From the NCBI GenBank assembly GCA_976226885.1, contig OZ320317.1:50034001-50098000 (forward strand): DNA of 64,000 nt. Reading direction: 5' to 3'. The position numbers and the translations under genes were made by a program. This document shows, piece by piece, positions 1 to 62,312 of the stretch. This DNA comes from Iphione sp. A-MEVVRFRX5 (lineage: Eukaryota). Numbering within the stretch: the first letter of the stretch is position 1; every line of letters begins with the position of its first letter. Under the pieces are notes generated by a model. It worked only from the letters and a program-made list of their open reading frames with translations, had not been told where the DNA came from and did no database searches.

Positions 1-132
1 ATATGTATCATTAGGATATATCATTACTATCACTATTTTATTTGAATTGTGATTTCCTCAGTTTAACACATATTGGCCTGGAATTGAGGAATAATGGTAG
101 TTCTTGTAATTAATATTCCTTTTTTTTGACAG

Positions 133-1471
133 CATACATACCCTGACAGTAACAAACAGTACTTTGCCAAGCCATCACTTGGGATTATCAACTATGCTGT
201 TGGTAAGATTGAGCTGACAGTCACAGCTGACAGTCATACACCAGTGTTGATGGACTTTATGGCTGAGTTCTGTGAAGAGATAATAACAACAGCTACAACA
301 ACAACTACATCTGGAGTGATGACAACAGCATCACCCGGCCCTACAACAACAGGTATGAGGAGGTGTATCAAAGATACACTGCTGACCATTTATGAGCATC
401 TACATTTAAATAATAATAACATTTGTATCTAGATATTCAGACTGAATATTCCCCCTTTGAGTATGAAGTATCTGAATTTTGTGGAATAAATTATAAATTA
501 GAGGGGGTGTATATAACATGTAGAGTGAATGAGGTGGTCTTATTTTGCTAATAATCATCACCACTGCAAGAGGCACTACCTTATGCAATGACGTTTTTAA
601 TTCAGCAAATTGAATTATATTCCTTTTATCCTGAATGCATATAACAGGCACAATGGAATGTTTTTCCTGATATGATTAGTTATATAAGTGGTCCTGTTTA
701 AATAGTTCATTTGTTTTGTGTTTAGACTATTGGATTATGATATTGAATCTACTTAAGATGCTACAACTATAGTAATCCTTGTTTTGTAGGTCCTTGTGCT
801 AATGGCATTAGATTGTGGGACTATGACCATACTGTGGGCTTGACTGTCAAGACTGACTGTGGCCAGGATGCCACTGATATACTAAAGGGTTCTGGAACAA
901 CATTCAGTCCACCTGTAGATAACAATAATCAAGTAAAGATCATCTTTGAGACCACTTTCCTTGGAGGAATCACAGGCCTTTTGGACTTTAGCCTTATAGT
1001 GCAAGGTGGCATTACTGTTGTCTTTGAAGTATATGGAGCAAATGGTTTCAAGTACTTCTGGAGTCAGGTAAAGTCTATAGCACAAAATCATATTTTTCAT
1101 GGTTGTCTTGCTAATATTTGGAAATAAAGAAATCTTATATAAATATATTGTTACTATTGTTAGTTCATTTTTTTATGATTACAAAACCTTAAAACATAGT
1201 TATCTGGAATAATAGTCATTCTTTATATTTAACATTCTTTCATTTTTACAGCATACATACCCTGACAGTAACAAACAGTACTTTGCCAAGCCACCAATTG
1301 GATCTGTCAACTATGCTGTTGGTAAGATTGAGCTGACAGTCACAGCTGACAGTCATACACCAGTATTGATGGACTTTATGGCTGAGTTCTGTGAGGAGAT
1401 AACAACAACACCTACAACAGCAACTACATCTGGAGTGATGACAACAGCATCACCTGGTACTACAACAACAG
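133..1471 (+). CDS. Subfamily A repeat domains: C-half of one copy plus one full copy (PCANGIRLWD...PVLMDFMAEFCEE)
   Basis: Exons 133-352, 790-1067, 1252-1471. Exons 133-352 and 1252-1471 are near-identical, including the intron start gtatgaggaggtgtat. Confidence 0.85.
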
Positions 1472-4400
1472 GTATGAGGAGGTGTATGAAAGATGCAGTT
1501 ATGAGCATTGATGTGCAATTATATTTGAACACTATATACTATGAATAGATATTCAAACTGAATATTAAACCTTAATGGATGTATTATTTAAACGTTATTG
1601 TAACAATGCTGAATTAGAGAAGGCTTTATAATCTCATTACTCATTTAAACTATTTTTCAGTCAATGGCACCACTGGTACAAGTACAACACCGGGCATAAC
1701 ATCATCTCATGGAATCACAACTTCAACAGGTGCAACAGGCACAACCACACCTGGTGTTACAGGTGCAACAACGACTGGTACAACTGTAACCGGAACAACC
1801 ACAACCCCAGGGGTGACTAGTACAACAACCAGTGTAACAACTACAACAGTATCTCCCAGCACCTCTTCCACAACAGCAACTACCACAGGTCATTTCTCTG
1901 TTATGTATATAGATATATATATACATGTATGTATCTAAGCTTAATGATTAAAATACTAGCCTTTCCGCTTTCACAGCCAAAGAAAGAACTTTGGTAGATC
2001 ATATCTTTCAAACGTCTGTCTAATATAAAAGGTTTTAAATTCTCCCCTGCTCTTCTGGTTTAGCCTTCCCATGTGCCCATGAGGAGCAAATCTACAACTA
2101 CACCCAGTCGACAGGCATCACTGTTACTGATAGTGGAGGTGATAATGCCACCGAGGCATTGAAAGGTTCTCCCAGTGGTTCATATACCCCAAGCACTGCT
2201 GGAACAACAACGATAGTAATCACCGTTGACCAGCCTGGCGAGAACACCCTGATGGAGGTTCCACCTTTCACAGTTACTAATGCATGTACAGTCAAGTTCA
2301 CCATCACAAGTCCAAACGGCGATGTATATACAACAACAGTGAGTAAATTGAAATTATTAAATGAAAGTCAACATATTTATTATAGTATACGAAATAATAT
2401 TTTGTCATATTACAAACCTTGATGAAAGCACTAACATGATCCATCGGCTTGCTAAGAAAGAGTATCTTGAAATTCAGGTGATTGTTCTAAGGTCGTGATT
2501 GGTTCCTGGAAGGGATGGATTGGGACATAGAGTTATTGAGGACTTGTATTTTATCCATCATCATCTTTTTCTCATTTGACAGGTTACTACTGGCTCAATC
2601 AATGAGACGGACGTTGTTTATATTACACCGGTAATCCCGTTAAACATGGAAATGGAGACAATTCAGATCCTTGTTCAACCTCTGAATCCCAACAACTCAG
2701 TATCCATAGGAGACGTGGTGATTAAGGTGTGCTCCAAGCCTCCAGGTAAGAATATGCCGCATTGTGTCATGACCGTGGGTCGTCCACGAGGCCTTCCAAT
2801 AAGGAAAAGGATCGAAGCTTTCTAATGGATGCATTCGATATCAAGTTGTTGCGTTACCTTTGGTGTAGATAATTTAATGTATGTATTGATATAACGACTG
2901 ACATATTTATGAAATATCGGAACACGCAGCTAGAGTTTGTGACCCAAGCGTGAACTTAAGTGACTCTCTATAGAAAACCATATTTATGAAATACGTCCCT
3001 TACAAAGTGCTGTTTACATTTCCTAGTTACAACCACTATTACGACGCCAGGAACAACGACAACAGTGACAACAACAACAACAGCTGGTACAACAACGACG
3101 CCAGCTATAACTTCAACTACAGCAGCTAGTTCTACTGCAACAACCACTACTGTTCCAACTACAACTACAACTATGGCCACCACCACAACAGGTACAGTGG
3201 AGTGCCTCCATAGGGACGTGCCTCTAATAGGAATGTGCCTCTTATTGGGACACTTGAGCATAGAACCGAAATATTTCCTATAATATCATGTTTAAGGGAG
3301 AGGCTCTAATAGGGCCAGGCTATAGGGGTGGAGCTCCTCCATAGGGACAGTGCAAAGGCAGGTTTATACTGTGAATCAGTGGGCTTATGGCATGAATCGG
3401 CAGGTTCTTACCCGGAATCGGGCGTCAATTGGCGGCGGGAGCTGCCAGGAGCACAATGCCCAGAGGTGTGAGATATAGGCACAACCTGGATGGGTAGAGG
3501 GCTTACAGGAGCACAATACCCACAGGTTTGAGATATAGGCACAACCTGGAGAAATACAGGGCTGACAGGAGCACAACACCCAGAGGTGGGAGCTTGGCAC
3601 GACCTGCATTAGTAGAGTGCTGTCAGGAGCACAAAACCCAGAGGTCTGGGATAGAGGTGCGACCCGGAGGGCAGAAGACCGCTAGAGCAGTTCTGCATGA
3701 TGACTTGTACAGAGTGGCCTCAGGCCACAATGTCTCTAATAGGGTTTCGCCTCAATCAGGGACAGTTTGATGAAGAACAGAGGGTGTCCCTATGAGGTTC
3801 TCTGCTGTATAAACCTTTTTTCCCACCGACAAATATAATTGATACGTAACAAATTGGAGCTACTGTAATTCGGGATTATTCATATACATTGTATTATGTC
3901 CTTGGCTCAAGGCCATTTCAATACAGGACAGGATGCCTCACGAGAAAACCGTATTTATGCTTTGAGCACTTCACACCATGACTAACTCATGTCGTAATAC
4001 TTGAGAGAATAGCTCGGATAACCAAGATATCTTGTTATAACATCAGGCCTGTAGCCCGGAAGTTTTGTGGGGGATGGGGTATCAGATGATACTCCAAATA
4101 CCCCAAAGGTGGAACAATTGTTTTTCATCTCTATGAGGGCCTATAGGCATTAATGTTTGTGGGGGGTATCGGATGATACCGTAATAACCCCCTTGGCTAC
4201 GGACATAAACATTCCTTTTTATAGTCATGCCCTGACTTACTATTTTCTTTCACTTCAGTCTTGCCTTGCGCTCATGACGAGCAGATATTCGACTTCCACA
4301 ACCAGAACGGTTTGGAAGTAGAAGATGGCGGCGGCCAGAATGCCTCTGACGTGCTCAAGGGCTCTTCGTCGGGCGCCTACACGTCAACTTCCGGTCCAAC

Positions 4401-7400
4401 ACTCGAACTGACCTTCACAGAGACACAGCCTGGTGAAAACACCCTGATGGAGATCGCGCCTTTCAAGGTCACCAACGTGGACACCATAAAGATCATCGTA
4501 GAGGCTTCCAATGGCGATGTCTACACGACGACCGTAAGCAAAATGACCATTACTTTAATCTTTCCTATGTGAAATATATCGATTGCGTTAATTCTTAACC
4601 GTAAGGTATATCTGCGCTTCTGAACGAGCTGATTCTTCCACTGGTTTCACATGATAAAGTAATGCTTTTTGCTATTTCTTGGAGTTATCTCTCCTCTTTG
4701 GTATCAATAACATGCATACTGAAAAACACCAAAATGTTGTGGAATCAATATATCTTATATTGATGTAAATTGATATTGATATGTCTGATATATGCTGTAT
4801 CTATTTATATAGAGTATAATGTATATCATTAGCTGCTGCCATGGCGATGTATGTAACCATAGAGATGTTGCTAGGTTATTCCATATTCCACCTTCCATAT
4901 GACGCTCTCTACATTCCACGTTCAGCTTTCACTTGTATATTATCGTATTTATTATCGTGTAAATCTGGGTGATCACTAAACTATGTGGCTAACATTCTTT
5001 CATAAAGTAAGCTTGTTGTTGCCTGCAGATCGACTCTGGTGTAACAGACGACCAGCAGCTAGTCACCATCACCCCACAAATCCCGGTCGACATGGAGATG
5101 AACACGGTGACATTCGTCATCGAGCCCATCAATGATGCCAAACCTATCACCATTAGTGACGTCGTCATCAAGATCTGCTACGTGCCACCAGGTGAGGGCT
5201 TATATGAAAGGTTGCACCGTATAGACATCTTTATTCCAGACATAGTCCCAAAGACCTTGATCTCTGTGAGTATGTTTTACTTAGAGACATTTGTTTTGTT
5301 CACAAAAGGGCACTTGCTTGTATTTACGCATATATACATTGTGGCTTATAAGAACTCAGTAGCATACGGTGTTCTAACCACTGTATGATTCAATTTTATT
5401 TTGAAGTGACAACCACCACCCCAGTAACCATAACAACTACCACAACTACCACTGCCGGAACCACAACTATTCCATCAACGACAAGTAAGATATGAAAATA
5501 TTACATACATAACGAGACCCCCAACTCTAATACATAATATTTTAATTCAATTAGTTTACTTTCATGCAGTTCTGAAATCGCTCTTCCATTCTAAAGAGTG
5601 CAATAATTTGTGGAAGGTCTAACAGGCGTATTTTTTAAATTTCTGATGCAACAGCAACGACTACTGTCCCGACTAGCTCGACCACAACAACAGCTCCTTC
5701 AACTACGACCACAGTCTCAACGCCAACGACAGGTTTGCATGAATAAAGCATTCGAATACATTTCAGTTATACCTAAACCATTCAAGTTACCGAATCGATA
5801 ATCTAGCTTAAGTGTTTTGCCAGCTTTTTGTACTCTTACCGTTCACAAACTGATGCTTGACTTCCAGTTGTGCCCTGCGCACACAATGAGCAAGTATTTG
5901 ACTACAGCAGTCAGACTGGCATCACGATCACTGACGGAAATGGTAATGATGCCTCTGAGGCCCTCAGTGGATCTCCCTCTGGTTCGATCAGCCTGACCCC
6001 ATCTCCAACATCCTCCATCGTCATTGTTGATGATCAGCCGGGTGAGAACACCCTCATGGAGATAAGCGCCTTCACGGTCACCAATGTTCAGACAGTGGAG
6101 GTCGTCATTGAATCACCAAGTGGAGACATCTACACTACCAATGTATGTGGCTGTGCAGTAGCTCTGTGATTGTAGAAACATATTATATCCTTTACCGAAA
6201 TCACACGACGATTTTGATTTGAAGAAGAGGGAAGAGAGAATGGTCATAACTGTAGTATTACCATATTTAAAATTTAAACCAACCCTGTTTTCTATTTAAT
6301 CTATAGTGGCAGTAATGGGACGTTATCTCTCGTGCCCGCCGACCAGAATACTGAAAAATGTATTGTACCTTCCCCATTTCCTACCGGAGTTCTAAGAAAA
6401 GCACTCTTTGTCTTGTAACTTTCAGATCAACACTGGAGCCGTAGATGCTGCTGATGTGAAGACAGTTTCCCCAACTATTCCCACCGACATGGAGATGGAG
6501 AGTCTTACATTCCAGCTGACCCCTCTCGAGCCTACCAACAATGTGACCATCGGTGACGTCGTCATCAAGGTCTGCGCAATCCCGCCAGGTGTGTATTTGC
6601 ATGAGTAATTCGGAGGCTTGTCACTTTATGTTGTACCTGTAAATTGATACCGGTTAAAGAGACATTTTGTATCAGTGTTCTGCGTTAGGCTAATTATGCT
6701 ATATTTTCGCACCAGTTGTTCCGTATGCATCGGTAATGACTTTCGAACAGAGACAGGCCGGTTGAAATTAGTGCTTGTGTGTCGTTCCATCTGCTAATAC
6801 ATGTTATAGTTTTGTAGCGAAAAATACATTCGGATTCATATATACTACAGGTTCAACAACAACACCAGGTAGCACAACATCAACCATCACCTCCACAACC
6901 ACAGGCACCACAGCAACGCCGCCAACTAGCACCAGCACCACAACACCTGGTACAACAACCATTACCACTGGTACTACCACTGGATCTACCACAACAACCA
7001 CCACTACTGGTATATCACTTACATTGTATTATTCCTTTCGTGATGCACAAATATGAATGCACAATATTACAAGGCATTCATACTATTACTGATATGTATA
7101 TCATGCATTCTATATAATGAGCAAACATGTATTTTGTTTTCAAAGGAGTGAGCACAACCACAACTCCCGCCGTGGTATCAACGACCACAACAGTTGTAGG
7201 AACAACGACTACAGGTACTCAACCGTCTCAGTATTATATTTCTCAAGTATTCTTGGTCACCGATATTTGTGTTATTAAACCAACGTTAGAAGATTGTCTA
7301 AGCCTTGTTATACCTGACTGAACTTGGGTGCTGGTATAACATGAGCTGTAGTGTTTTTATGCTACTGCATAGTAATAAGATCCCTGTGTAAACTGACAAT

Positions 7401-10400
7401 GTTCGTAAAACATATAAATGCGTCTACATAACAGCAGCATGTTCATACATAGGATTGGTCTTAATTCCTCTTAAGAGGTGGACTTAAGAGATCGAGTAAT
7501 AAATGAAACAACGCTGATGGATCCCCCTCGGGATTATCAGTAGCATCTTTAAGAAACGAACTCACCACTGTTTGGTTCCTCCAGTTCAAGTATGTACCGG
7601 CACCGAGCAGCTGTTTGATGCCAACACGCCCTCCGGTATCACCGTCTCCGACAACTCTGGCAACGACGCGTCGAGCGCTCTATCAGGATCCCCCGACAGC
7701 CCCTACACGGCGCCGGCCGGGACCACGGCATCCGTGGTGATTGAGTACACGCAGCTCTCAAACAACACCCTCATGGAGATCCCGCCCTTCCAGGTCACCA
7801 ATGCCCGGATAGTGACGGTGAAGGTGTATGACGAAGATGGCCAGATCTACAACATCACGGTAAGATTTCCTCGTGGAGAGTAGCTGTAATAATATTTCCA
7901 GGGGCCTCTGTCATGGAAGGTCGCACTCTTCAGAATCAGTAGCTTTCTCATGGACTACCACTGCTCAGTCTTTACATGGGTATCTGAGTCGGTCTGAACA
8001 CAGATTCATGAGTTTATTGACTTTATCGAGACGGACTGGCGGACTTGGTAGACTACATTCTTTCTAATACTTCGGTTCCGCGCAGGTTGATGCTTCCGCC
8101 CTTAACGATAGCACGATCGTCGTCGATGTTCCGACGGGGCTGACACTGGGCAAGATCGAGATCACCGTCTGCCCGGCCAGTCAGGGGCTTCCGGTGACTA
8201 TCGCCAATGTTACCATCAAGGTGTGCACCCACCCACCAGGTGAGTTCTCGGCTGTCGTCGGAGGATGGGGTGCATAAAGTCAGAGGTCTCAGGAATTGTA
8301 CTCTCAACGTATGAACCTGTCAGCAATATACATTTTTTTTATAAATATAAACATGTACATATATACAATTTATATTCCTTGATGTTGAACTCACATGTTT
8401 GCTTCATCTATTAGAGTCAGCATTGGAGTGCTGGTTCAGGTTCAGAGAAATGCGTCATGTGATAACAATGATCATTGCATCCTCTTCAAAATCAGGGACC
8501 GGATATGAATTTGAAATATCCTCTTTTGTGATTAAAGGAACAACAACGCCAACGACCAGCACAGTGCCCACAACAGTAAATGGTACAACCACAACCGGTA
8601 CAACCATTACTGGTGTAACATCCACAGTTACTGGCACTACAACAACACCATCACTCACCTCATCACCTACAACCACTACAGCTACAACTGTCCCTACATC
8701 TACAACTGTGAGCACAACGTCAACACCATCAACTACTCCTCCAGTTACTACTACAACAGGTAAGATTATCCACACTTAAGCTTTCATTAAGTATTTCTAG
8801 TGAGCCTGCCATCGAAGACAAAGTACACGTTTTTAAGGTACTGTATACACTTTAACTTGGAATGTAACTCGCACAGTAGAATAAAACATGTACCTATAAC
8901 CACTTTACATACTACTTCTTTTTATCATGGGGCATGCATACTCATCATACAGTGCATCTAAAAGGGTAATTTGTAATACGCCCATCGACTAAAAACAAAT
9001 TAGGCCTGTAATACAGGAAGTTTGGTCAAAAAGATTCCAAGTGTATTATGACTGTAAAGGATGCTTCAGTATGTTATCACCAAGAACACGTCTCCGTGGT
9101 TTTTTTTTTTCTAGTACCCTATTGCGTCCAGAACGAGCAGGTGTTCAACTACAACAACTCTGCTGGCATCATCGTGGAAGACAGCAATGGCTCTGACGCC
9201 ACGTCGGCCCTGTCCGGCTCGGGAACGAGCTACACGTCCAGTCCGCAGCCAAGTGTGACGGTTGTGGTCACGGATGACCAGCCAGGGCAAAACATCCTCA
9301 TGGATGTACCTCCCTTCACTGTAACGAACGCTATCACCGTCAAGGTGCGGGTGGTGAGCCCGAATGGAGACACCTATCTGACAACGGTGAGTGTCTGGCG
9401 TGATGTCGTGTTTGGGAGTCCCAGCAGTAAGCCCCTACCTCATCACAATGTGTAATTTAGTTCATGTACTATGAAATATATTATTTACATTGGGTTGGAG
9501 AGCTCAACCATAGACATCTACCGTAGCACAATGCGTGTTTAGTTTTCCTAAGTATATCATTCTGGATTAGACTCTTACACCCTTGTGGTAATCATTTACA
9601 AGATTTTGATATTTAGTTGATGAAAGTAATAAACAAACAAACGTGAACTTTTGAAAGGAGTTTACATATGAAACTGGCACATTAGCAACGCCTTCTACAA
9701 AAATTCCTACTTGTGAAAATATCATGGTCTGTAAATCACACCTGAGTGTCGCTCCTTCCTAGGTAGACTTTTCTCTGGGATTATTACTCTCATCTTGTGA
9801 GCGTAGATTGTACAACCTCCCACTGATAACATCGATCATTTTCATATCACTCGCGTCACAGATCAACACTGGTGAGACCTCACCGGGTGCACCGGCCACC
9901 ATCACAGCAGTGGTGCCCTCTAACATCGAGCTGAACAAACTGCAGATCGTCATTATCCCAATCGACGACTCACTGCCGGTCACCATCAGCGACCTGACCA
10001 TCAAGGTCTGCGCTCACCCGCCGGGTATGTATTGACCTCTGAAACACCAAGGTCAACCCTGACCCTGTGTCATTCTTATTTGGGGCTTCTGCTAATTTCT
10101 ACTCTGTGGAATTTGTATAAATTCTGTGTAGCCAGTTTTGTGTTTCCCTGCCTATCCGGAAAATATATTACTGTTCGATAAGACGAATTCTGAGATCATT
10201 GATTCGCTTAATTTCAGTAACAACAACCACCACCTCAACAACATCCACAACAACTGTTCCTACAACGACTGCAACCACTACAACAAGTAAGCAGAAATAC
10301 TCTGTTAGATTATTGTGTACCTGTAAATCATTTGTTTCAGTGAAATCACGCTACATTCCCCTGGCTCCTCTTAACCTTCCGATTGTATTTTCTTTCATAT

Positions 10401-31400: not shown

Positions 31401-34400
31401 CCACTACTGGTGTGACAGGTACCACCACCACTGGTGTGACTGGAACTACCACAACACCAGGTGTGCATGTGACAACATCAACACCAACTGTTGGAACAAC
31501 CACAACACCAGGAGGGTACAGTACAACTACGACAGGTACAACTGGAACTACAAGTGTGACAGGTACTACAGGTGTGACTGGAACAACCACCAGAAGAGTG
31601 ACTGGAACGACCACCACAACAGGAGTGACTGGCACTACTCGAGGAACTAGCACCACGACCACTACTGGTGTGACAGGTACAACCACCACTGGTGTGACTG
31701 GAACTACCACAACACCGGGTGTGCATGTGACAACATCAACACCCACTGTTGGATCAACCACAACACCAGGCGTGTACAGTACAACAACCACAGGTACAAC
31801 TGGAACCACAAGTGTAACAGGTACTACACGAGGAACTAGCACCACCAGTACTGGTGTGACAGGTACCACAACCACTGGTGTGACTGGAACTACCACAACA
31901 CCAGCTGTGCATGTGACAACATCAACACCAACTGTTGGAACAACCACAACACCAGGAGTGTACAGTACAACTACGACAGGTACAACTGGAACCACAAGTG
32001 TGACAGGTACTACTGGAGGAACTAGCACCACCACTACTGGTGTGACAGGTACCACCAGCACTGGTGTGACTGGAACTACCACAACACCAGGTGTGCATGT
32101 GACAACATCAACACCCACTGTTGGAACAACCACAACACCAGGAGTGTACAGTACAACTACGACAGGTACAACTGGAACCACAAGTGTGACAGGTACTACT
32201 GGAGGAACTAGCACCACCACCATCGGTGTGACAGGTACCACTACAACTGGTGTGACTGCAACTACCACAACACCAGGTGTGCATGTGACAACATCAACAC
32301 CCACTGTTGGAACAACCACAACACCAGGACTCTACACTACAACAACAACAGGTACAACTGGAACCACAAGTGTGACAGGTACTACAGGTGTGACTGGAAC
32401 AACCACCATAGGAGTGACTGGAACAACCACAACAACAGGAGTCACTGGTACTATTGGTGTGACTAGCACCACCACTGGTATGACAGGTACCACACCGACT
32501 GTATCAGGGACAACAACAACCCCAGGCATCTCTGTGAGTACAACAACTGGAACCACAAGCACACAAACTGTCATCTTAGAAACTACTCAGCCCCCAACAA
32601 CAACAACTAGTCTAGGAACAATTTCATACACAACAACTCAACCAACTGGCACAACCACCACTGGTGTTACAGGAACTATGACTACTGGAGTAACTGCTAC
32701 CACTAGCACTAGTGTGACAGGAACCACTGCTGTGACAGGTACAACTAGTACAGAAGTGACAGGCACCCCAACTACTGGTGTAACGGGTAGCACTACCACT
32801 TTGTCTGGAACAACAACAACACCAGGTGTGCATGTAACAACAACAACACCCACCGTTGGAACAACCACAACACCAGCACTGTCCAGCACAACCAGAACAA
32901 CACAAGTAACTCCTTCCACAACAACTTCTTCTGTTGGAACAACGACCCCAGTGATTGGGTCCTCCACCACAGCCATTACAACTGGAACTACAGGTAGGAT
33001 TTAATTGATTTTAAAGTTTTTCTGTTTCCTTGAAAAAGAAACATTTGATGATTGTTCTCGTGTTCCGGATATACTGAAATTGAAATTTCGAGTACTGTAA
33101 TGTAAATTGTTTCAATCATCTCTTTATTCAGGCACACAGCCTACTACACCAGAAGTGTCTACAACAGCGATCTCAACGAGCACACGTAAGATACTTTGGT
33201 TTGCTTGTAGTATACATAGTAATATGCATATTCAAATATTTCGGTTTATTACAGGGATTTCGTTTTTAATATTGCTTTTTTTTAAAAGAGTTCTCTGTGT
33301 ATAGTCATATCGGATTCTTGAGACATATCTGAAAGAAACCAATATATATCCTGTGGGAAAACTTCATGTCAAACAAATAAGACATGGCCCTGAAAATGTT
33401 ACTGATTTGCTTTTGATCGTAGGATAACTTATCATTAGTAGATTCAGAATGCAAAGTATAGAAAAAAGAGGGGACATGTGTGTATAACCAGCCTAGATCC
33501 CAGAAGTGTTAATGTAGACAAATCAGCCACCTTTTTTAATTGGTTTAGAGAGGTCATTATCATTCCTTTTCGAAATTCAGTCATCTTCACTAGTATTGGA
33601 CTACCTTGCAGATACTGGCGTTTCCTCGCCTACAACACCAACTGTAACAGGGGGAACAACAAGTGTCACTGAGACAACAACATCAACCACTGCTACCACG
33701 CCACACGTCACAACTCCATTTGGTAAAAATATCTTGTAATCTTGTACAGAACATTTGAACGGTTACCTTCTGATAAAGAGCTCCTAGTGATATTATCATT
33801 ATTTCATATCTGAAAATAGTGAAGAATCATAACCAAATTACCTATGTGAGTGTATCATTGACGCTATATAAATGTAGTTGAAGTTACCTTATGCATATAA
33901 AGTATTCAACGATATGTTAAAATACATCGAGATAAATTGGTTGTAGTTTTTAAATGAGTAATAATGGAATACTGTAAATTTACGTTCTAAACTGAACACA
34001 CGAATAGCATTATTTCAAGCATTCATATTTTTCAGAAACCTCTACTACCACCACGCCACCACTCACCTCTTCCTCTACTGCGAGTAAGTGTCGTTTCTAT
34101 TTACAGCTACTAGAATCTAAACAATAGAACTTCTCATGGTGAACGCTTGAAGAACTAGTCGGATGGCCTGCTATGTAGGAATGGTCGTTGCGGAGAGAAT
34201 GACGTTGTATAAATTAAACACCAATATTGGCATAATAGTTCAGATTATATTCACTAGGGGAGTACTATGAGATACCTAAAGAGAATAATACCTGAAGATC
34301 ATACTTCAGTGTATGAACTTGTAACTTAAGGTTTCTTCCAAATTCTGCTCGCACTTTTACAGTCTGTCGGTTCCCTCCCCCATTCTCAAAGGTGATACTT

Positions 34401-37400
34401 TGTAATCTACTACATGCTAATTGTTCCGGGCTCATTTACTCAAAGACACTGACTTTTTTAGTCAAAGCCACTTGAATTTAACTGTATCCTGTTCTGTAGA
34501 CTTTAAAATATTTCAATTTCACAGGTATTACAACATCCACTGGTACCACCGTGGAAACAACCACGACCACATCAGGGCAGTTTACCACTGCAGTTCCAGT
34601 CACAACAACAAGTAAGTCATGATTTATTAAGTTGTTACTCGAACATGTGGTTCGTACAACCACACACTGAATCGTTTTGTCTGTTTCTCTTGTTCAAATT
34701 TATTTCACGATGTAGCTACTCTGTGCCATGTTACAATATGTTTCACTACTCTTTGGTTTTTGTGTACATACAAGTACATGGTCACAATTTGATCAACGAA
34801 TACTCAGTGTCCGACGAAATATATTCTAGATAGAAATATTTTTCTAACGTTTTATTTCCACTGGAAGGCACTTATACAATTAGTATATATTCCAGTAACA
34901 TCTTGTGCATTGCTAACAAAAATTGGAACCCTTAGTCACCGTGTTGTACCTCTGGCTGATAAACACATATCCGTAAACCTTACTCATGGTTAACTAACGC
35001 TCAGTATCCAAGCAAACTCTTTTCCTGCAAAAAATGTTATACAGTGAAGCTCATTCAGATACCGAGTCATGACTGGACATAATTTTGTATTGATAATATG
35101 TAGTCTCATCTGCTGAAAATTCAGTTTTGATGTAAATATTTAATTATACCATTTGAAAATGATATGTATTTTTCCCTCTAATATATCTATGGTGCATTTT
35201 AGAGCTGATTAAATACCTAAATAAAAGATTCCAAACACATTCTGTTTTAGTCTATACACAAATATACAACTTTAGTTAGTTTTTGCATGATAATAAAAAA
35301 ATTAAAAGTATGGAGGAGCCATTAACATTGTATTAGCCATGCTATTTACTAGTGTCTCTTTATATTTTGTTTCAGCTCCTTGTGCAAATGGAATCAGACT
35401 CTGGGATGCCATCAATAATATTGGTTTTACTGCTAAAAGTGGAACAGGAGATGATGCATCTGATATTCTTAAGGGTTCTGGAACTTCCTATATACCTGTT
35501 ATGGATGCCAATAATCAAACACAGGTCATATTTGAAACAACTTTCCCTGGAGGAATCACTGGCTTGTTGGACTTCAGTTTTGTTACTCGGGGTGGAGTAG
35601 AAGTTGTGATGGAAATTTATGGAGCAAATGGATTCAAGTACTTCTGGAATCAGGTATAGCCTAGAGTAAAGTGATTGAGCCTTTGAAGCTTAAACTGTGT
35701 TGCTTGATGTAATTTAGCATGTTAACAAGAATTGAATCTTAATTACTGATGTATAGTGAAAGTAAGTTATATTGTAATACAAAGTTTCACAAAAAAAGTT
35801 GTTTTTCCTTAGGGGCTATGATAAAAGTGTACATATGACCATATATTTATTCATTATAAGATAATTCCTGTGGTTTAGCTTTTGTGATCTTGTATGAAAT
35901 TTGTCATTAAAATGGTATTGAAACTTTATTTCTTTTTCCAGTTGACATTCCCTGATAGCAACCAGGAATACTATACTAAACCTACCATTGGAACAGTAAA
36001 CTATGCAGTTGGACATATTGATTTGATAATCACTGCTCAGAGCAACGAACCAGTCCTCAAAGACTTTATGGCTGAATTCTGTGAGGAGGTTACAACTACA
36101 GCAACAACCACTACTACAGCTGCTGTGGTAACAACTGCAACTCCTCCAACCCCAACAACAAGTATGTGGCTGTACACCCTGTTTACTCTCTTACTGAATC
36201 ATACCAGAATGGCTTACAAACTTGAACCATGACTTTTCTAGTTTATTTTGGATAGTTTAATGTGATCTACAAGTACTGATATGATTTGAAAATAATTCAT
36301 TAATCAATGTGGATAATATCAGCAAAAGATATGCTAATGTTCTTTACCTGGAAACTGTGATAAATATATAAGTCTGAGAATAAAGTTAAAACGTGATATG
36401 TATGTTTGTTTTTCCTACATATATGTCAAATTACAATCTGATTGAATGACTAAATAAAGATATTTTAGTCTATGTTTATACATGTTTCATTCCTTTACTA
36501 TCATATACAGGAGAAACTCACTTTGCGACCTCCTCACTTTGCGACCAAATCGACTATTGCGACCATTTTGGGTCGGAACGGAATTATTTTCAGTACATTT
36601 TCTATATGAGAGGAACTCACTTTGCGACCATATTGCTTTGCGACCAAATTCACCCTGCGACCACTCATCTTAGGGTCATTTTCTGTATATTTTAATATCA
36701 CTTTGCGACCGCCCAGCGTCAACGGGGACTTCTTTGATGGTCTCTCACCCTGGAGGGGGTCGGGTTGTTTTTAGTACATTTTAATATGGGCCAATTGGCG
36801 AAGGTGCTAATTGGCTGTCATTGCCAGCGCGACAGACCATTACACTGGCCGCTCGGCCACAGTCGCTTGCAGTGAGACCCTAGAGAGGGTCTGCCGAGAG
36901 TGAACGGGGGTGTCGGGGGTGACCTCTCTGATGTTCTCTCACCCTGGAGAGGGTCTGCCGAGAGTGGTAGGGGGTGTTGGGGGCGACCTCTCTGATGTTC
37001 TCTCACCTCTTTGAGTCACTTATAGTCATCAAATTCAGCACTTTTTGGACTTGAAGTCATCAAATTCAGCACTTTTTGGACTTTTAGTCATCAAATTCAG
37101 CACTTTTTGGACCTAAAGTCATCAAATTCAGCACTTTTTGGACGTTTCATATGTTAATAAAGAGAGAGGGAGAAAGGGATATGATTTCAAGCCCAGACCC
37201 CCTCCACAATCACTTTGCGACCATATTCAGAATTACGACCATTTTGGGCCGACCCAAGTGATGGTCGCAAAGTGAGGTTCTCCTGTATTGTACTTTTTAA
37301 GAATAATTCCATTCACCTCATTTTTAATAATATTCTTAACTTTCAAGCTCCATGTGCCAATGGAATCCACCTTTGGGATAACAGTAATACACTTGGATTT

Positions 37401-40400
37401 ACTGTTGAAAGTGAGACAGGACAAGATGCATCTGATATCTTAAAGGGATCAGGAACATCTTACAGTCCGGTGCCAGATGCTAACAACCAGACAAAGGTCA
37501 TCTTTGAAGTAACTACTCCTGGAGGAATTACAGGACTTCTTGACTTTGATTTTATTGTACAAGGTGGAATATCTGTGATAATAGAAATCTATGGCCCAAA
37601 TGGTTTCAAATATTTCTGGCATCAGGTAAGTAATTTCATTAAATTGATGCAAGTATTTTGTAGATTTGTACTCCTATGGCATACATTTGACCACCTTTCT
37701 AGAAGACTAGGTATAAAATGAAACAGAAAAACAGTAACAGCAAATACATTAAACAGAAGTGATCGATATATATGAAGCTTTTATCATGTAGATAGAAACA
37801 AATGTTAGCATATTTTATAGAAAGTTTTTAAGTTATTTATGTGTATTGATATAACATGCAAGTTGACATTGAAGTTTATTTAATATTTTACAGCTCAGCT
37901 ACCCTGACAGTAACCAGGAATACTTTTCTAATCCATCTCTTGGAACAATCACCTATCCAGTTGGTAAAATTGAGTTGACAATTACATCCCAAAATTATCA
38001 GCCTGTACTTAAGGACTTTATGGCTGAATTCTGTGAAGAAGTAACAACAACAGAAACTACAACAACTACATCAGGAGAAATGACCACCGCTACACCTCCC
38101 ACAACATCAGTTACAAGTACTACTAGTGTACCTGGAACAACATCTACTGTAGGAGCAACATCAACAGGAGTGACAGGATCAAGCACAACTGGAGTGACTG
38201 GCACTACTACTACTGGTGTAACTGGGACCACTAGTGTCACTGGTACTACAACAACAACTGGTGTGACTGGAACAACAACTGGTTTAACTGGATCAACAGG
38301 AGTGACTGGTACAACCACTACTGGAGTGACAGGCACCACTACTACGGTGTCTGGATCTACCACAACACCAGGTGTACATGTGACAACAACAACACTCACT
38401 GTGGGAACAACCACAACACCAGGAGTGTACAGTACAACTACCACAGGTACAACTGGAACCACAAGTGTGACAGGTACTACTGGAGGAACTAGCACCACAA
38501 GCACTGGTGTCACAGGTACAACCACCACTAGTGTGACTGGAACTACCACAACACCAGGTGTACATGTGACAACATCAACACCCACTGTGGGAACAACCAC
38601 AACAACAGGAGTATACAGTACAACTACAACAGGTACAACTGGAACCACAAGTGTGGCAGGTACTACTGGAGGAACTAGCACCACGACCACTGGTGTCACA
38701 GGTACAACCACCACTAGTTTGACTGGAACTACCACAACACCAGGTGTACATGTGACAACATCAACACCCACTGTGGGAACAACCACAACACCAGGAGGGT
38801 ACAGTACAACTACAACAGGTACAACTGGAACCACAAGTGTGACAGGTACTACTGGAGGAACTAGCACCACGACCACTGGTGTCACAGGTACAACCACCAC
38901 TAGTGTGACTGGAACTACCACAACACCAGGTGTACATGTGACAACATCAACACCCACTGTGGGAACAACCACAACACCAGGAGTATACAGTACAACTACA
39001 ACAGGTACAACTGGAACCACAAGTGTAACAGGTACTACTGGAGGAACTAGCACCACAAGCACTGGTGTCACAGGTACAACCACCACTAGTGTGACTGGAA
39101 CTACCACAACACCAGGTGTACATGTGACAACATCAACACCCACTGTGGGAACAACCACAACACCAGGAGGGTACAGTACAACTACAACAGGTACAACTGG
39201 AACCACAAGTGTGACAGGTACTACTGGAGGAACTAGCACCACAAGCACTGGTGTCACAGGTACAAGCACCACTAGTGTGACTGGAACTACCACAACACCA
39301 GGTGTACATGTGACAACATCAACACCCACTGTGGGAACAACCACAACACCAGGAGTATACAGTACAACTACAACAGGTACAACTGGAACCACAAGTGTGA
39401 CAGGTACTACTGGAGGAACTAGCACTACCACCACTGGTGTGACAGGTACCACTACCACTGGTGTGACTGGAACTACCACAACACCAAGTGTACATGTGAC
39501 AACATCACCCTCTATTGGAACAACAAGCACCACACCAGGAGTGGGCACTACAACAACCACAGGAGTGACAGGCACAACCACAACCGGTGTCACTGGAACT
39601 ACCACTACTGTATCCAGCACAACCACAACTCCAGGTGTACATGTGACATCATCTCCCTCTGTTGGAACCACCACTACACCAGGAGTAAGTACGACAACCA
39701 CCACAGGAGTGACTGGCACAACAACCACAGGAGTGACAGGCACTACTAGTGTAACAGGCACTACTGTCATTACAGGCTCAACAACTACATCAGGACAATT
39801 CACAACAGCAGTTCCAGTCACAACAACAAGTAAGCTGTTATAATATTTGTAATACTGTCTCTGCAAAAGTACGTTCCTTTTGCCTTAGATATATCTGAAT
39901 GAACTAAATCCAATTAGCTCATAAAGCTTGAAGCAGGAATTTTCAAGTTTTTCTGAGAAATTTAGAAGAAAATTGTAAATATTGACATTACTTGAAGATG
40001 ATATATTAATCTGTTTTGATAATATCAGCAAAGAAACTTTTCATCTTTGTTGCCTATTAAACTGTTAGGACTATGCAAGTCTAACATAAACTTGTAAGAT
40101 AATATGGTTATTGCCCTCTCTTTTATTTGCTGTATATTATACTGATTCAATTTCTGAACTTTAGTTGTAAATATGATGTTTTTTAATCTGTGTGTACTTA
40201 CATCCCATTATCAATCAATAAGACTATGTGTTCAGTATGAAAAGGATTTGGTTTAATTATTGCAGTCAAGGCATAGATATTGTTTCCAGAAAAGATACAA
40301 TTTTTAGTTTTTGCATGATCATAAAACATTGAAAGTATAGTGTAGTCTTTAACATTGTACCCTACATGCTGTTTACTCATGTCCTTTTATATATTATTTC

Positions 40401-43400
40401 AGCTCCTTGTGCAAATGGAATCAGACTCTGGGATGCCATTAATAATATTGGTTTTACTGCTAAAAGTGGAACAGGAGATGATGCATCCGATATTCTTAAG
40501 GGTTCTGGAACTTCCTATATACCTGTTATGGATGCCAATAATCAAACAAAGGTCATATTTGAAACAACTTTCCCTGGAGGAATCACTGGCTTGTTGGACT
40601 TCAGTTTTGTTACTCGGGGTGGAGTAGAAGTTGTGATGGAAATTTATGGAGCAAATGGATTCAAGTACTTCTGGAATCAGGTATAGCCTAGAGTAAATTG
40701 ATTGAGACTGTGTTGCTTGATGTAATTTAGCATGTTAACAAGAATTGAACCTTAATTACTGATGTATAGTGAAAGTAAGTTATATTGTAATACAAAGTTT
40801 CACAAAAAAAGTTGTTTTTCCTTAGGGGCTATGATAAAAGTGTACATATGACCATATATTTATTCATTATAAGATAATTCCTGTAGTTTAGCTTTTGTGA
40901 TCTTGTATGAAATTTGTCATTAAAATGGTATTGAAACTTTATTTCTTTTTCCAGTTGACATTCCCTGATAGCAACCAGGAATACTATACTAAACCTACCA
41001 TTGGAACAGTAAACTATGCAGTTGGACATATTGATTTGATAATCACTGCTCAGAGCAACGAACCAGTCCTCAAAGACTTTATGGCTGAATTCTGTGAGGA
41101 GGTTACAACTACAGCAACAACCACTACCACAGCTGCTGTGGTAACAACTGCAACTCCTCCAACCCCAACAACAAGTATGTGGCTGTACACCCTGTTTACT
41201 CTCTTACTGAATCATATCAGAATGGCTCACAAACTTGAACCATGACTTTTCTAGTTTATTTTGGATAGTTTAATGTGATCTACAAGTACTGATATGATTT
41301 GAAAATAATTCCTTAATCAATGTGGATAATATCAGCAAAAGATATGCTAATGTTCTTTACCTGGAAACTGTGATAAATATATAAGTCTAAGAATGAAGTT
41401 AAAATGTGATATGTATGTTTGTTTTTCCTACATATATGTCAAATTACAATCTGATTGAATGACTAAATAAAGATATTTTAGTCTATGTTTATACATGTTT
41501 CATTCCTTTACTTATCATATATTGTATTTTTTAAGAATAATTCCATTCACCTCATTTTTAATAATATTTTTAACTTTCAAGCTCCATGTGCTAATGGAAT
41601 CCACCTTTGGGATAGCAGTAATACACTTGGATTTACTGTTGAAAGTGAGACAGGACAAGATGCATCTGATATCTTAAAGGGATCAGGAACATCTTACAGT
41701 CCAGTGCCAGATGCTAACAACCAGACAAAGGTCATCTTTGAAGTAACTACTCCTGGAGGAATTACAGGACTTCTTGACTTTGATTTTATTGTACAAGGTG
41801 GAATATCTGTGATAATAGAAATCTATGGCCCAAATGGTTTCAAATATTTCTGGCATCAGGTAAGTAATTTCATTAAATTGATGCAAGTATTTTGTAGATT
41901 TGTACTCCTATGGCATACATTTGACCACCTTTCTAGAAGACTAGGTATAATATGAAACAGAAAAACAGTAACAGCAAATACATTAAACAGAAGTGATCGA
42001 TATATATGAAGCTTTTATCATGTAGATAGATAGAAACAAATGTTAGCATATTTTATAGAAAGTTTTTAAGTTATTTATGTGTATTAATATAACATGCAAG
42101 TTGACATTGAAGTTTATTTAATATTTTACAGCTCAGCTACCCTGACAGTAACCAGGAATACTTTTCTAATCCATCTCTTGGAACAATCACCTATCCAGTT
42201 GGTAAAATTGAGTTGACAATTACATCCCAAAATTATCAGCCTGTACTAAAGGACTTTATGGCTGAATTCTGTGAAGAAGTAACAACAACAGAAACTACAA
42301 CAACTACATCAGGAGAAATGACCACTGCTACACCTCCCACAATATCAGTTACAAGTACTACTAGTGTACCTGGAACAACATCTACTGTAGGAACAACATC
42401 AACAGGAGTGACAGGATCAAGCACAACTGGAGTGACTGGCACTACTACTACTGGTGTAACTGGGACCACTAGTGTCACTGGCACTACAACAACAACTGGT
42501 GTGACTGGAACAACAACTGGTTTAACTGGATCAACAGGAGTGACTGGTACAACCACTACTGGTGTGACAGGCACCACTACTACGGTGTCTGGAACTACCA
42601 CAACACCAGGTGTACATGTGACAACAACAACATCCTCTGTAGGAACAACATCAACAGGAGTGACAGGTTCAAGCACAACTGGAGTGACTGGCCATACCCC
42701 AATCACAACTACAACAACAGGTGTCACAGGAACAACATCAACACTTACAATTCCCACAACTACTACAGGTTTACTAAGTTCGACAACAACTGGAATAACT
42801 GGAAGTACTATCTTCACAACAACACCCACTACAATCACATTCTTCTCAACAGAATCGACAACGATGTCAACTCAGAATGTAACAACTGTCACAGGTGTGT
42901 GTACTGAATAATATTTCGTCAAGTTGAATGTATTTGATATGAGGTGACAACGAAAATATCGTGAGCTTCTTTGATTCAATTGTGTGAGCCAGTAAACAAT
43001 TATAACATTCTCCTGTAATCGTTTAAACAGTTCCCGTGAGTACCACGACGATGCCGACCACCACCACGACGATTGTGTCAACGACCACCTTCCTAAACGC
43101 CACTACGTCGCCATCCGTTTGTGTTTTCGACGCCGCCGCCTATGAGGCAATCTTTGGTCACCCCCCTAGTGAAAATGGTCCGATGGCATGGATCGAGAAA
43201 GACAATATCGTTGGTTACAGCTCGACGGCCGAGCAGCTGCACTTGGGTGACCTGCTGCAGGTCGGCGTACAGATGCATACCGATTGTCGTGTATGGTAAG
43301 TTTGGCCAGCTTTACAGCTACGCAGACGCGTGCTCATTTTGACGGGGATATAAACTTTTTCCTAAGCAACATATGTCAATGAGATAGACACGCAGATCAT

Positions 43401-49400: not shown

Positions 49401-50152
49401 ATCTAAGTAGAATATTCGGCTTGCTGAGAAAATTGTTTCAAGATTTTCTCTTTTAAATGTGAATTATGAGTGACAGATGGAAAGATAATACGTAAAGATT
49501 GTACATAGATACATATCGAGTTACTAAACAAGGCTAGATATTTGACTAACTAAACCTTTGAAGCCAAACCGGATATATACTGGAATTTATCTAATACTGC
49601 CGATCAGATATATCTACAAGATACCTATGCATATCTGTCTGTAATTCATTCCGATACATGAATAACTCGACAAAACTGAGATGAGATCCTCCCGCTAAGC
49701 TAGATTTGTTTCTGTCATTTAAATTTTTTTCCTGATTGCAGTTGTGACTAAGTGCACGACGAAGGTGTCGACACGCTACATCAACGTGACCGACGAAGGC
49801 GGCCAGGTGTGCCTGTCCCCGGCTCCGGTCAACATCTCCTACTGCTCCGGCTACTGCCCATCAATGGATGCCAGTACCATTCGCTTCAAGGACACCTCCT
49901 ACGAGGTAAGCCTTTCTTATCTATACCTTAGATCAGACCACTGTTCCTTCCCACCGACTGCACCTATTGCCCTTGCACCACCAGTCTAATTTGTTTTCGT
50001 TCATAACAAGGACCAGCCTTTCAAATGTTGGTATATCTGTATCCTATCTGTTTCTGTGCTAGCTGTGAAGACGACTACCCACCTCTTTGCCCCTGTCCGG
50101 GTGTAGATCTGTCTGTCTGATTTTCGGTCTGTCTGTCTTTTTGTCTGTCTGG

Positions 50153-50226
<74 letters not shown>

Positions 50227-56366: not shown

Positions 56367-56635
56367 TGTGGTGCTGTGGAGTGCGGCATCAGGAGGCAAC
56401 CCCCGGTGCTGAGTGCTGCATGCGGAGTGCGGCACCAGGACGCGCCGGGGAATGCGGAGTGCTGCACTCCCCACCCTCCCCCTGCCCCCTGGGGTGGGTA
56501 TATAAGGGGCTACTGAGGGATGAGGGGGCCAGTTGGAGCTGAGCCACTGTGTTAGTCACATCTCTTGTCTGTTGGAATAAACCCCATTGTCTTAAACCTT
56601 AGTCATGTCTTTATTACGTAACGGCAAACGCTACA
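56367..56635 (+). repeat. 5' LTR (269 bp, TG...CA)
   Basis: Starts TGTGG after ATAT (candidate 4-bp TSD at 56363-56366), ends CTACA one base before the PBS, and contains TATATAA (56499-56505) and AATAAA (56576-56581). The 5' boundary cannot be confirmed without the 3' LTR. Confidence 0.75.
56499..56505 (+). promoter_or_regulatory. LTR TATA box
   Basis: gggTATATAAgggg, 77 bp upstream of the LTR AATAAA; usual U3-R-U5 layout. Confidence 0.6.
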
Positions 56636-56636
56636 T

Positions 56637-56654
56637 TGGTGGCAGCGGTGGGAT
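56637..56654 (+). promoter_or_regulatory. Primer binding site complementary to tRNA-Leu
   Basis: TGGTGGCAGCGGTGGGAT is the reverse complement of ATCCCACCGCTGCCACCA, the 3' end of eukaryotic tRNA-Leu (IAG/UAG type) including CCA. Confidence 0.9.
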
Positions 56655-62240: not shown

Positions 62241-62284
62241 TCAATTGTTGACGCCGCGCCTGCAACGTGCAAGACCTTGACTTA

Positions 62285-62310: not shown

Positions 62311-62312
62311 TG

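What the first reader, a model, noticed from the sequence alone, without database searches (positions are those of the whole stretch)
790..42278. A repeated ~130-150 aa two-exon domain in three subfamilies, probably a cryptic F5/8 type C family
Seen: 19 complete copies and 1 partial (8 type A, 7 type B, 5 type C). All begin with a Cys, end in a hydrophobic beta-strand plus Cys (AEFC, IKVC, VEVC), share D-A-(S/T)-x-x-L-x-G-S near the start, and are split by a phase-0 intron at an equivalent point. Only the copy at 27823-28788 still shows clear discoidin motifs; types A and B would be hard to recognise alone. Established: FA58C domains are closed by an N-to-C disulfide and bind glycans, lipids or collagen. 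Inference: all copies are one fold that has diverged in binding surface, giving a multivalent array with several specificities.
Basis: partly seen in the sequence, partly recalled or inferred. Interest (0 to 1): 0.7.

Follow-up and report, generated by a model that had tools for sequence, protein, structure and literature searches.

The report
Hidden discoidin-like domains in giant mucin
A giant invertebrate mucus-protein gene carries about 29 copies of a small two-exon domain that standard domain libraries miss; it most likely has the sugar-binding "discoidin/CBM32" jelly-roll shape, which makes it a diverged variant of a domain already known in invertebrate mucins.

Summary
The window has 19 complete copies and 1 partial copy of a ~140-aa domain. 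Each has two exons with canonical splice sites, an internal phase-0 intron, one Cys near the start and one in the last strand. Nine more copies lie upstream. All are in one ~78-kb gene and nowhere else in the 1.18-Gb genome.

The gene is a SCO-spondin-like gel-forming mucin: 3x VWD-C8-TIL, LDLRA, then domain/PTS units, then TSP1/TIL and a cystine knot.

Pfam does not recognise the domain, exon by exon or in spliced homologues. PF00754 finds true F5/8-C exons elsewhere in the genome but none here.

An intronless homologue from a metatranscript gave a confident model (pLDDT 88). All 50 best PDB neighbours have the galactose-binding-domain-like fold (IFT25, DOC, CBM32, neuropilin b1/b2, factor VIII C; Z 10-14.6). 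The window's own exon-1 peptide, folded alone, recovers 38 of those 50 entries, but only at Z 5.6 or less.

So the fold reading is supported; membership of the F5/8-C sequence family and any binding function are not shown. "Type C" is five unrelated-looking singletons, and the "clear discoidin motifs" in copy C5 are not significant.

The parts
130..279 (+). Copy A0, partial: exon 2 only. Its exon 1 lies upstream of the window.
   Evidence: upstream exon 1 at G000:C11:50033644-50033916
790..1398 (+). Copy A1: exon 1 790-1067, exon 2 1252-1398
2064..2738 (+). Copy B1: exon 1 2064-2338, exon 2 2583-2738
4259..5184 (+). Copy B2: exon 1 4259-4533, exon 2 5029-5184
5868..6581 (+). Copy B3: exon 1 5868-6142, exon 2 6426-6581
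7591..8232 (+). Copy B4: exon 1 7591-7859, exon 2 8086-8232
9115..10017 (+). Copy B5: exon 1 9115-9386, exon 2 9862-10017
10730..11981 (+). Copy B6: exon 1 10730-10998, exon 2 11826-11981
13181..14155 (+). Copy B7: exon 1 13181-13455, exon 2 14006-14155
14314..16506 (+). Large Thr-rich PTS exon with a 186-nt (62-aa) tandem repeat, 9 copies
16991..17706 (+). Copy A2: exon 1 16991-17268, exon 2 17560-17706
18209..19189 (+). Copy A3: exon 1 18209-18486, exon 2 19043-19189. Exon 2 runs on into a PTS tract up to about 21001 (186-nt repeat, 8 copies).
21895..22662 (+). Copy C1: exon 1 21895-22175, exon 2 22513-22662
23391..24081 (+). Copy C2: exon 1 23391-23665, exon 2 23941-24081
24513..25448 (+). 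PTS exon with a 213-nt tandem repeat
25598..26149 (+). Copy C3: exon 1 25598-25848, exon 2 25994-26149
26663..27362 (+). Copy C4: exon 1 26663-26931, exon 2 27210-27362
27823..28787 (+). Copy C5, the outlier: exon 1 27823-28097, exon 2 28641-28787. It has the same exon layout and terminal Cys, but only a weak profile link to the other copies.
28793..33001 (+). Largest PTS exon (1403 codons) with 186-nt repeats
35376..36088 (+). Copy A4: exon 1 35376-35653, exon 2 35942-36088
   Evidence: exon 1 folded
37348..38040 (+). Copy A5: exon 1 37348-37625, exon 2 37894-38040. Exon 2 runs on into a PTS tract up to 39829.
40403..41101 (+). Copy A6: exon 1 40403-40680, exon 2 40955-41101. A recent duplicate of A4.
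41582..42278 (+). Copy A7: exon 1 41582-41859, exon 2 42132-42278. A recent duplicate of A5; a PTS tail runs to about 42894.
43027..43296 (+). Cys-containing module that follows the last domain. The same module sits in the same place in the metatranscript homologue P0070.
43694..44719 (+). Two thrombospondin type 1 repeats
   Evidence: TSP_1 E 4.5e-10 and 6.3e-7
44812..45090 (+). TIL-like Cys-rich exon (below the Pfam cut-off)
45789..48487 (+). Further TSP1 repeats (45789-45938, 47785-48183) and a TIL domain (48101-48487)
49723..50537 (+). C-terminal cystine-knot exons, taken as the end of the gene. The Pfam match is weak; the Cys pattern resembles the tail of P0070.

Best explanation
The repeats are real coding modules of one giant secreted glycoprotein gene, about 78 kb long. 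Its layout is 3x VWD-C8-TIL, TIL and 2 LDLRA, then about 29 units of [140-aa domain + Thr-rich PTS tract], then TSP1/TIL repeats and a C-terminal cystine knot. That is a SCO-spondin-like gel-forming mucin.

Each module is a phase 1-1 unit split by a conserved phase-0 intron. It most likely folds as a compact galactose-binding-domain-like jelly roll of the discoidin/CBM32 type, with its N- and C-terminal Cys placed to form the closing disulfide.

The family has diverged so far that Pfam's F5_F8_type_C model no longer detects it.

Inferred, not shown: the folded modules break up the O-glycosylated bottle-brush segments and act as binding nodes. They probably bind glycans, either those of the mucin itself or those of microbes and surfaces. 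Once the protein is polymerised through its VWD and cystine-knot ends, this would give a multivalent, cross-linkable mucus or adhesive gel.
For: Anatomy:
- Canonical splice sites and consistent phases in all 20 copies.
- Phase-1 donors follow every exon 2 or its PTS tail, except in A3 and C2, where the scan found none at its threshold.
- No copy is broken.
- dN/dS is 0.07-0.21 among type A copies.

One family: exon-1 profiles A/B/C align at 97-99% probability. Exon-2 profiles link A and B through C.

Conservation across species: the same two-exon split is found in the nemertean Tubulanus polymorphus (XP_074658701) and in a Logan contig. A metatranscript (P0070/L013) has the same domains unspliced before the same tail. 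hhalign aligns them with the window's exon 1 in register (Prob 81%, E 1.2e-5) and with exon 2 (E 0.004).

Fold:
- The model of L013 domain 2 has pLDDT 87.9 and pTM 0.83.
- All 50 top rows from VIA-align are b.18-type domains: IFT25 Z 14.6, HERC2 DOC 12.9, CBM32 NanJ 12.7, and neuropilin b1/b2, factor VIII C, DDR2 DS and discoidin I at Z 10-11, covering 115-132 of 141 residues.
- Foldseek returns the same families.
- The window's exon-1 peptide alone (pLDDT 80.7) shares 38 of its 50 top entries with that list. It always matches the N-terminal two thirds of the target.
- A weak sequence match of the exon-1 profile to the CBM32 chitosan-binding module 4zy9/2rv9 (E 0.36) aligns the conserved G-x-D/E-A-S...G-S...Y/W block and ends where the structural alignment ends.

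Context:
- VWD, C8, TIL, LDLRA, TSP1 and cystine-knot matches and 186-nt PTS repeats.
- F5_F8 domains are described as typical of lophotrochozoan mucin-like proteins, which resemble SCO-spondin (PMC4948705).
- SCO-spondin has one FA5/8C domain (PMC8487547).
Against: - The confident model is of a homologue only about 15% identical.
- The window's exon-1 model reaches only Z 5.6, below the level the tool calls meaningful, and Foldseek finds nothing for it.
- The alignment used for the homologue model contained the window's exon-1 rows, so the two models are not fully independent.
- There is no profile match to PF00754 or to two genuine F5/8-C domains of this genome.
- The CBM32 sequence hit disappears with a broader profile.
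- The top structural neighbours, IFT25 and DOC, bind proteins rather than sugars.
- No RNA run was listed, so expression and splicing are unconfirmed here.
- There is no evidence at all on ligands.
Confidence: 0.7

Rival explanations
1. The fold is the same, but the domains are not lectins. They would act as folded spacers or protein-protein contact points that interrupt the PTS tracts, as CysD domains do in vertebrate MUC2/MUC5. They would not recognise sugars.
For: The best structural neighbours are the protein-binding IFT25 and DOC domains. The classical F5/8-C and CBM32 sequence signatures are not detectable. The placement between PTS tracts mirrors that of CysD (PMC4948705).
Against: Most of the top 50 neighbours are carbohydrate-binding modules or lectins. 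The one conserved sequence block lines up with the block conserved in a CBM32 module. Diversification into types under purifying selection fits varied ligands better than inert spacers.
Confidence: 0.3
2. The domain is an independent jelly-roll family inside, or merely resembling, the galactose-binding-like superfamily. It would not descend from the F5/8 type C / CBM32 family, so 'cryptic FA58C' would be the wrong label.
For: No significant sequence or profile link to PF00754 was found. Z-scores do not separate F5/8-C from IFT25, DOC, F-lectin or allantoicase.
Against: The terminal Cys pair lies where neuropilin b2 and factor VIII C1 have theirs, judging by the aligned ranges (the disulfide positions are from my own knowledge). 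The gene has the architecture in which F5/8-C domains are known (PMC4948705, PMC8487547). There is a weak in-register match to a CBM32 module.
Confidence: 0.25
3. The window's domain has a different fold from the metatranscript homologue that was modelled, so the fold assignment does not carry over.
For: Identity is only about 15%. hhalign covers 48 columns of exon 1 at Prob 81% and exon 2 only weakly. The homologue has two extra Cys.
Against: Length, position in the protein, terminal Cys and downstream tail are all the same. The matches are in register. The window's exon-1 model independently ranks the same structures.
Confidence: 0.07
4. The copies are decaying or unexpressed exon-like repeats, not parts of a working gene.
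For: No RNA run could be listed.
Against: All 39 exons are open with canonical splice sites and matching phases. dN/dS is 0.07-0.21. Spliced or transcript homologues exist in other species.
Confidence: 0.03

Closest known systems
F5/8 type C (discoidin) domain / CBM32 (Pfam PF00754)
   Same: Size of about 140-150 aa; distorted jelly-roll fold (Z 10-12.7); Cys near both ends; extracellular setting; occurs in invertebrate VWD-containing mucin-like proteins and once in SCO-spondin (PMC4948705, PMC8487547).
   Different: No significant match to the family profile, although the profile detects genuine members exon by exon elsewhere in this genome. The canonical Trp-rich signature is largely replaced. 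About 29 copies are interleaved with PTS tracts, not one to three copies.
Invertebrate mucin-like proteins / hemolectin-hemocytin with F5_F8 domains (Lang et al. 2016, PMC4948705)
   Same: [quoted passage not shown] The paper reports them as most similar to SCO-spondin and as characteristic of Lophotrochozoa.
   Different: Here there are no C-terminal VWD units. The tail is TSP1/TIL/cystine knot. The domains are Pfam-invisible and amplified far more.
SCO-spondin (vertebrates)
   Same: 3 VWD + TIL, LDLRA, a discoidin-type domain, TSP1/TIL repeats and CTCK, in the same order (PMC8487547).
   Different: SCO-spondin has one FA5/8C domain, 27 TSRs and no mucin core. This gene has about 29 jelly-roll domains, kilobases of PTS repeats and only a handful of TSRs. 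An EMI domain was not detected.
CysD domain of MUC2/MUC5 (Pfam Mucin2_WxxW)
   Same: A small globular disulfide-bonded domain repeated between PTS tracts of a polymerising mucin. It is the closest analogue in how the array probably works.
   Different: Unrelated fold and Cys pattern (CysD has many more Cys). No sequence similarity.
IFT25 and DOC/APC10 domains
   Same: Highest structural scores (Z 12.9-14.6, rmsd 2.3-2.6 A over 122-125 residues).
   Different: These are intracellular protein-binding domains without terminal disulfides. Identity is 5-12%, and the biological setting is entirely different.

Membership tests
F5/8 type C / discoidin / CBM32 (PF00754) | Significant match to the family's sequence profile | tested here: not met
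   There was no hit exon by exon or in the spliced homologues P0017 and P0046. PF00754 finds 33 exon matches in this genome, none in this locus. hhalign against two genuine members of this genome gives Prob below 1%.
F5/8 type C / discoidin / CBM32 (PF00754) | About 150-aa distorted jelly-roll beta-barrel of the galactose-binding-domain-like type | tested here: met
   Met for the homologue domain L013:604-1026: pLDDT 87.9, Z 10-12.7 to CBM32, neuropilin b1/b2, FVIII C, DDR2 DS and discoidin I, and Foldseek E about 1e-4 to 1e-3. For the window itself the only test was exon 1 alone, which agrees but weakly (best Z 5.6).
F5/8 type C / discoidin / CBM32 (PF00754) | Disulfide joining the N- and C-terminal ends of the domain (animal F5/8-C) | tested here: inconclusive
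   A Cys is present at both ends in all copies. In the homologue model the aligned ranges put Cys4 and Cys137/138 at the positions of the terminal Cys of neuropilin-1 b2 (428..586) and FVIII C1 (2018..2173). The disulfide positions come from my own knowledge. No coordinates were available to measure the distance.
F5/8 type C / discoidin / CBM32 (PF00754) | Ligand (glycan, lipid or collagen) binding through the loops at one end of the barrel | not testable with these tools
   Needs recombinant protein and binding assays.
Galactose-binding-domain-like superfamily (SCOP b.18) | Shared jelly-roll topology with members of the superfamily over most of the domain | tested here: met
   All 50 top rows of the Foldseek-independent search belong to this fold, covering 111-132 of 141 residues at rmsd 2.3-4.2 A.
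Gel-forming mucin / SCO-spondin-like protein | N-terminal VWD-C8-TIL units | tested here: met
   Three VWD starts, C8 and TIL in L017/L018 upstream of the window.
Gel-forming mucin / SCO-spondin-like protein | Long Pro/Thr/Ser-rich tandem-repeat (PTS) regions | tested here: met
   Open Thr-rich exons of up to 1403 codons with 186-nt repeats.
Gel-forming mucin / SCO-spondin-like protein | C-terminal cystine knot | tested here: inconclusive
   Cys_knot E 0.006 and TGF_beta E 0.002, both below the Pfam cut-offs. The second exon has no hit. The Cys pattern resembles the tail of P0070.
Gel-forming mucin / SCO-spondin-like protein | LDLRA and TSP1 repeats (the SCO-spondin signature) | tested here: met
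   Two LDLRA (E 5e-11 and 2e-13) and at least four TSP1.

The most novel reading that the evidence does not exclude
This may be a separate, so far unnamed domain family of lophotrochozoan worms, seen so far in a nemertean and in unidentified relatives. It would be a diverged discoidin-type jelly roll that became the repeating folded unit of the mucin core, serving as the invertebrate counterpart of CysD. It would also be the unassembled middle of the SCO-spondin-like proteins whose two ends (VWD+LDLRA; TSP1+CTCK) were found separately in limpet adhesive mucus (PMC7333891). Its subtypes would bind different glycans and set the cohesion or stickiness of the mucus.
Probability: 0.3. Interest if true: 0.6.

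Novelty: new variant of a known kind. Interest (0 to 1): 0.45.

Why it matters
Mucus and temporary adhesives of marine invertebrates are built from giant proteins whose repetitive centres rarely assemble and are poorly annotated. This locus shows such a centre intact: about 29 folded modules that domain libraries miss, alternating with glycosylated tracts.

If the modules are lectin-like, they would explain how such gels cross-link or capture particles and microbes. A new profile built from them would improve annotation of "uncharacterized" mucin-like genes in worms and possibly molluscs.

The result is an extension of a known theme (discoidin domains in invertebrate mucin-like proteins), not a new kind of system.

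Tried and rejected
- Pfam on single exons and on spliced homologues found nothing relevant.
- Word-index protein searches with P0006 (exon-1 part) and with the homologue-domain alignment found only the query itself or nothing.
- The metagenome scan with the homologue alignment confirmed no relative.
- The ESM Atlas was busy once. The second try returned only unnamed bacterial clusters at 0.88-0.90, which is uninformative.
- PDB profile search: a CBM32 hit at E 0.36 with the 19-copy profile was lost with the 54-sequence profile. I treat it as a lead only.
- Long bacterial proteins with Ig-like repeats appeared in the big HMM search. I rejected them: each repeat matches only 35-40 residues of a Thr/Ser/Gly-rich stretch at an individual E of about 1e-3.
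- Adding exon-2 rows to the folding alignment failed because MAFFT stacked them on exon 1, so they were left out.
- Reading a Tubulanus copy through its short intron failed because the intron has stops.
- No RNA run was listed.
- Foldseek on the exon-1 model found nothing.
- An EMI domain at the N-terminus was not confirmed.
Full report
**What is in the sequence**

Stop-to-stop frames on the + strand show a recurring pair of open frames separated by 150-800 bases, interleaved with long Thr-rich frames. I fixed the exon limits of every copy from splice sites and reading frame.

- Exon 1 is 83-93 codons. It always starts after an AG in phase 1 and ends before a GT in phase 0.
- Exon 2 is 47-52 codons up to two residues past the last Cys. 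It always starts in phase 0.
- All 19 exon-1 and 20 exon-2 pieces are open.
- Type A has 7 complete copies plus the exon-2-only copy at 130-279.
- In the tool alignments the Cys at exon-1 position 2 and the Cys near the end of exon 2 are invariant. G24, A27 and S34 of the G-x-D-A-S/T-x-x-L-x-G-S block are at 90% or more.
- After the last Cys, a phase-1 donor follows within one to three codons (types B and C) or after a PTS extension (type A). My scan found no such donor at its threshold for A3 and C2. Each domain is therefore a symmetrical phase 1-1 module, and all copies fit one reading frame of one gene.

**More than chance, and under selection**

- A profile of exon 1 finds 27 places in the 1.18-Gb genome. 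All lie between C11:50019560 and 50075856, which is this locus, so eight further copies lie just upstream of the window.
- Among 1.84 billion representative proteins only 68 score E 0.001 or better. About 45 of these are real, mostly single-exon fragments.
- Among type A copies dN/dS is 0.07-0.21, counted over both exons without joining them.

**One family or three?**

- Exon-1 profiles align A-B at 97.6%, A-C at 98.9% and B-C at 97.2% probability over 84-90 columns.
- Exon-2 profiles align A-C and B-C at 90-93%. A-B does not align directly.
- Type A (66-98% identical) and type B (35-58%) are true subfamilies. Type C is a set of five singletons, 18-26% identical to each other and to everything else.
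Together with its orthologue-like fragment P0041 it reaches only Prob 21% and E 0.001, though in register over 70 columns. Its membership rests mainly on identical exon layout, size, terminal Cys and position.

**The gene around it**

- Downstream of the array are a conserved Cys module, TSP1, TSP1, TIL, TSP1, TSP1, TIL and two cystine-knot-like exons ending near 50540.
- Upstream (L017-L019) are three VWD starts with C8 and TIL, a further TIL and two LDLRA repeats. Then comes a very diverged first copy of the domain (hhalign E 1.5e-4 for exon 1 and 1.8e-4 for exon 2), followed by the eight extra copies.
- Four large PTS exons carry a 186-nt repeat and one carries a 213-nt repeat.
- This is the SCO-spondin order of domains (PMC8487547) with a mucin core.
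- Lang et al. report that invertebrate mucin-like proteins resemble SCO-spondin, and that F5_F8 domains after three VWD-C8-TIL units are characteristic of Lophotrochozoa (PMC4948705).
- Other notes of this scan call the genome an annelid-type worm. I did not test that.

**Relatives**

- The only named relative is an "uncharacterized protein" of the nemertean Tubulanus polymorphus. Its repeated 150-aa unit is split into exons of about 91 and 58 codons by a phase-0 intron at the equivalent place.
- In a Logan contig of another species the intra-domain intron is kept, while exon 2, PTS and the next exon 1 form one exon.
- Nearly all fragment hits run on with Val (GTN) right after exon 1, which suggests the same donor.
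- A JGI metatranscript (P0070, loci L013/L014) encodes three uninterrupted domains followed by the same Cys module, TSP1, TIL and cystine-knot tail.
- Its domains align in register with the window's exon 1 (columns 43-90 on 43-90, Prob 81%, E 1.2e-5) and exon 2 (E 0.004).

**Is it an F5/8 type C domain?**

By sequence, no test is positive.
- Pfam gives nothing for single exons or for the spliced homologues.
- PF00754, run over the whole genome exon by exon, finds 33 matches elsewhere and none here.
- hhalign against two full-length genuine members of this genome gives nothing.
- A PDB profile search gave a sub-threshold hit (E 0.36) to the CBM32 chitosan-binding modules 4zy9/2rv9/4zxe. It pairs the family's conserved block with the module's G-F-E-A-S-R-A-F-D-G-S...W block. 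The hit vanished with a broader profile.

By structure, the answer is clearer.
- The only complete domain available by reference was L013:604-1026. Folded with an alignment of its sister domains and exon-1 rows, it gave pLDDT 87.9 and pTM 0.83.
- Foldseek returned discoidin I/II, IFT25, neuropilin b1, factor VIII C2, CBM32 and CBM29 at E about 1e-4 to 1e-3.
- The Foldseek-independent search gave Z 14.6 (IFT25), 12.9 (HERC2 DOC) and 12.7 (CBM32 of NanJ). Neuropilin b1/b2, FVIII C, DDR2 DS, muskelin, discoidin I and fucolectins scored Z 10-11. All 50 rows are galactose-binding-domain-like folds covering 111-132 of 141 residues.
- By the aligned ranges, the model's first and last Cys fall where neuropilin-1 b2 and FVIII C1 have their terminal disulfide. 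The disulfide positions are from my own knowledge, and I had no coordinates to measure.

For the window itself I could only fold exon 1 of copy A4 alone, with the 54-sequence alignment (pLDDT 80.7).
- Its best Z is 5.6, which by the tool's own note is not meaningful on its face, and Foldseek finds nothing.
- Even so, 38 of its 50 top entries are the same as for the homologue, and each aligns to the N-terminal two thirds of the target domain.
- For 4zxe the structural alignment ends at the residue where the weak sequence alignment ends.

That is the main gap.

**How it most likely works**

Shown:
- It is a polymer-type secreted glycoprotein architecture.
- Folded Cys-bounded modules alternate with PTS tracts.
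- The modules are under purifying selection.
- A close-in-architecture homologue has a galactose-binding-like fold.

Inferred:
- The window's domains share that fold and the closing disulfide.
- They serve as binding nodes, most plausibly for glycans.
- The A, B and C forms offer different surfaces.

The spacer or protein-contact alternative (CysD-like) cannot be excluded, since IFT25 and DOC top the list.

A lead I could not test: limpet pedal mucus contains one SCO-spondin-like fragment with VWD x3 + LDLRA and another with TSP1 x4 + cystine knot (PMC7333891). These look like the two ends of this architecture.

**Verdict**

The fold reading is supported mainly through a homologue. F5/8-C family membership and function remain open. 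This is a diverged, Pfam-invisible variant of a known theme, of moderate interest.

Noticed in passing
window 56000-64000: GC content jumps from about 40% to 59-66%. There is a 1101-codon gag-pol-type open frame at 58039-61341, followed by a small C2H2-like frame at 62217-62501. This looks like an LTR retrotransposon just downstream of the mucin gene (compare note s1-349298).
   Followed up: no
G000 contigs C60, C64, C54, C58, C34 (e.g. L022:1471-1896, L024:1471-1869): Small unplaced contigs carry intronless open frames of 533-613 codons with a full-length F5_F8_type_C match. They could be contaminant or bacterial-like DNA, or an intronless gene family. I used two of them only as genuine F5/8-C comparators.
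   Followed up: partly
L021 (Logan contig of run ERR14368248), 1-1035: In this relative, exon 2, the PTS linker and the next exon 1 are a single exon. Only the intra-domain phase-0 intron is kept, so the genomic repeat unit is circularly shifted relative to the protein domain.
   Followed up: partly
L018:4226-4531 and 4770-4910 (G000:C11, about 50018.2-50018.9 kb): The first jelly-roll-type domain, directly after the LDLRA repeats, is far more diverged than the others. It occupies the place where vertebrate SCO-spondin has its single FA5/8C domain, and it may be closest to the ancestral copy.
   Followed up: partly
window 35306-42900: The A4-A5 unit and the A6-A7 unit are a very recent segmental duplicate of about 5 kb. 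Exons are 98% identical in protein, the intra-domain introns are about 99% identical, and dS is 0.02-0.03.
   Followed up: partly
window 3441-3657 and 50100-50230: There is a 118-nt tandem repeat inside an intron. A CT-type microsatellite, which reads as Leu-Ser repeats, lies in the intron between the two cystine-knot exons.
   Followed up: no
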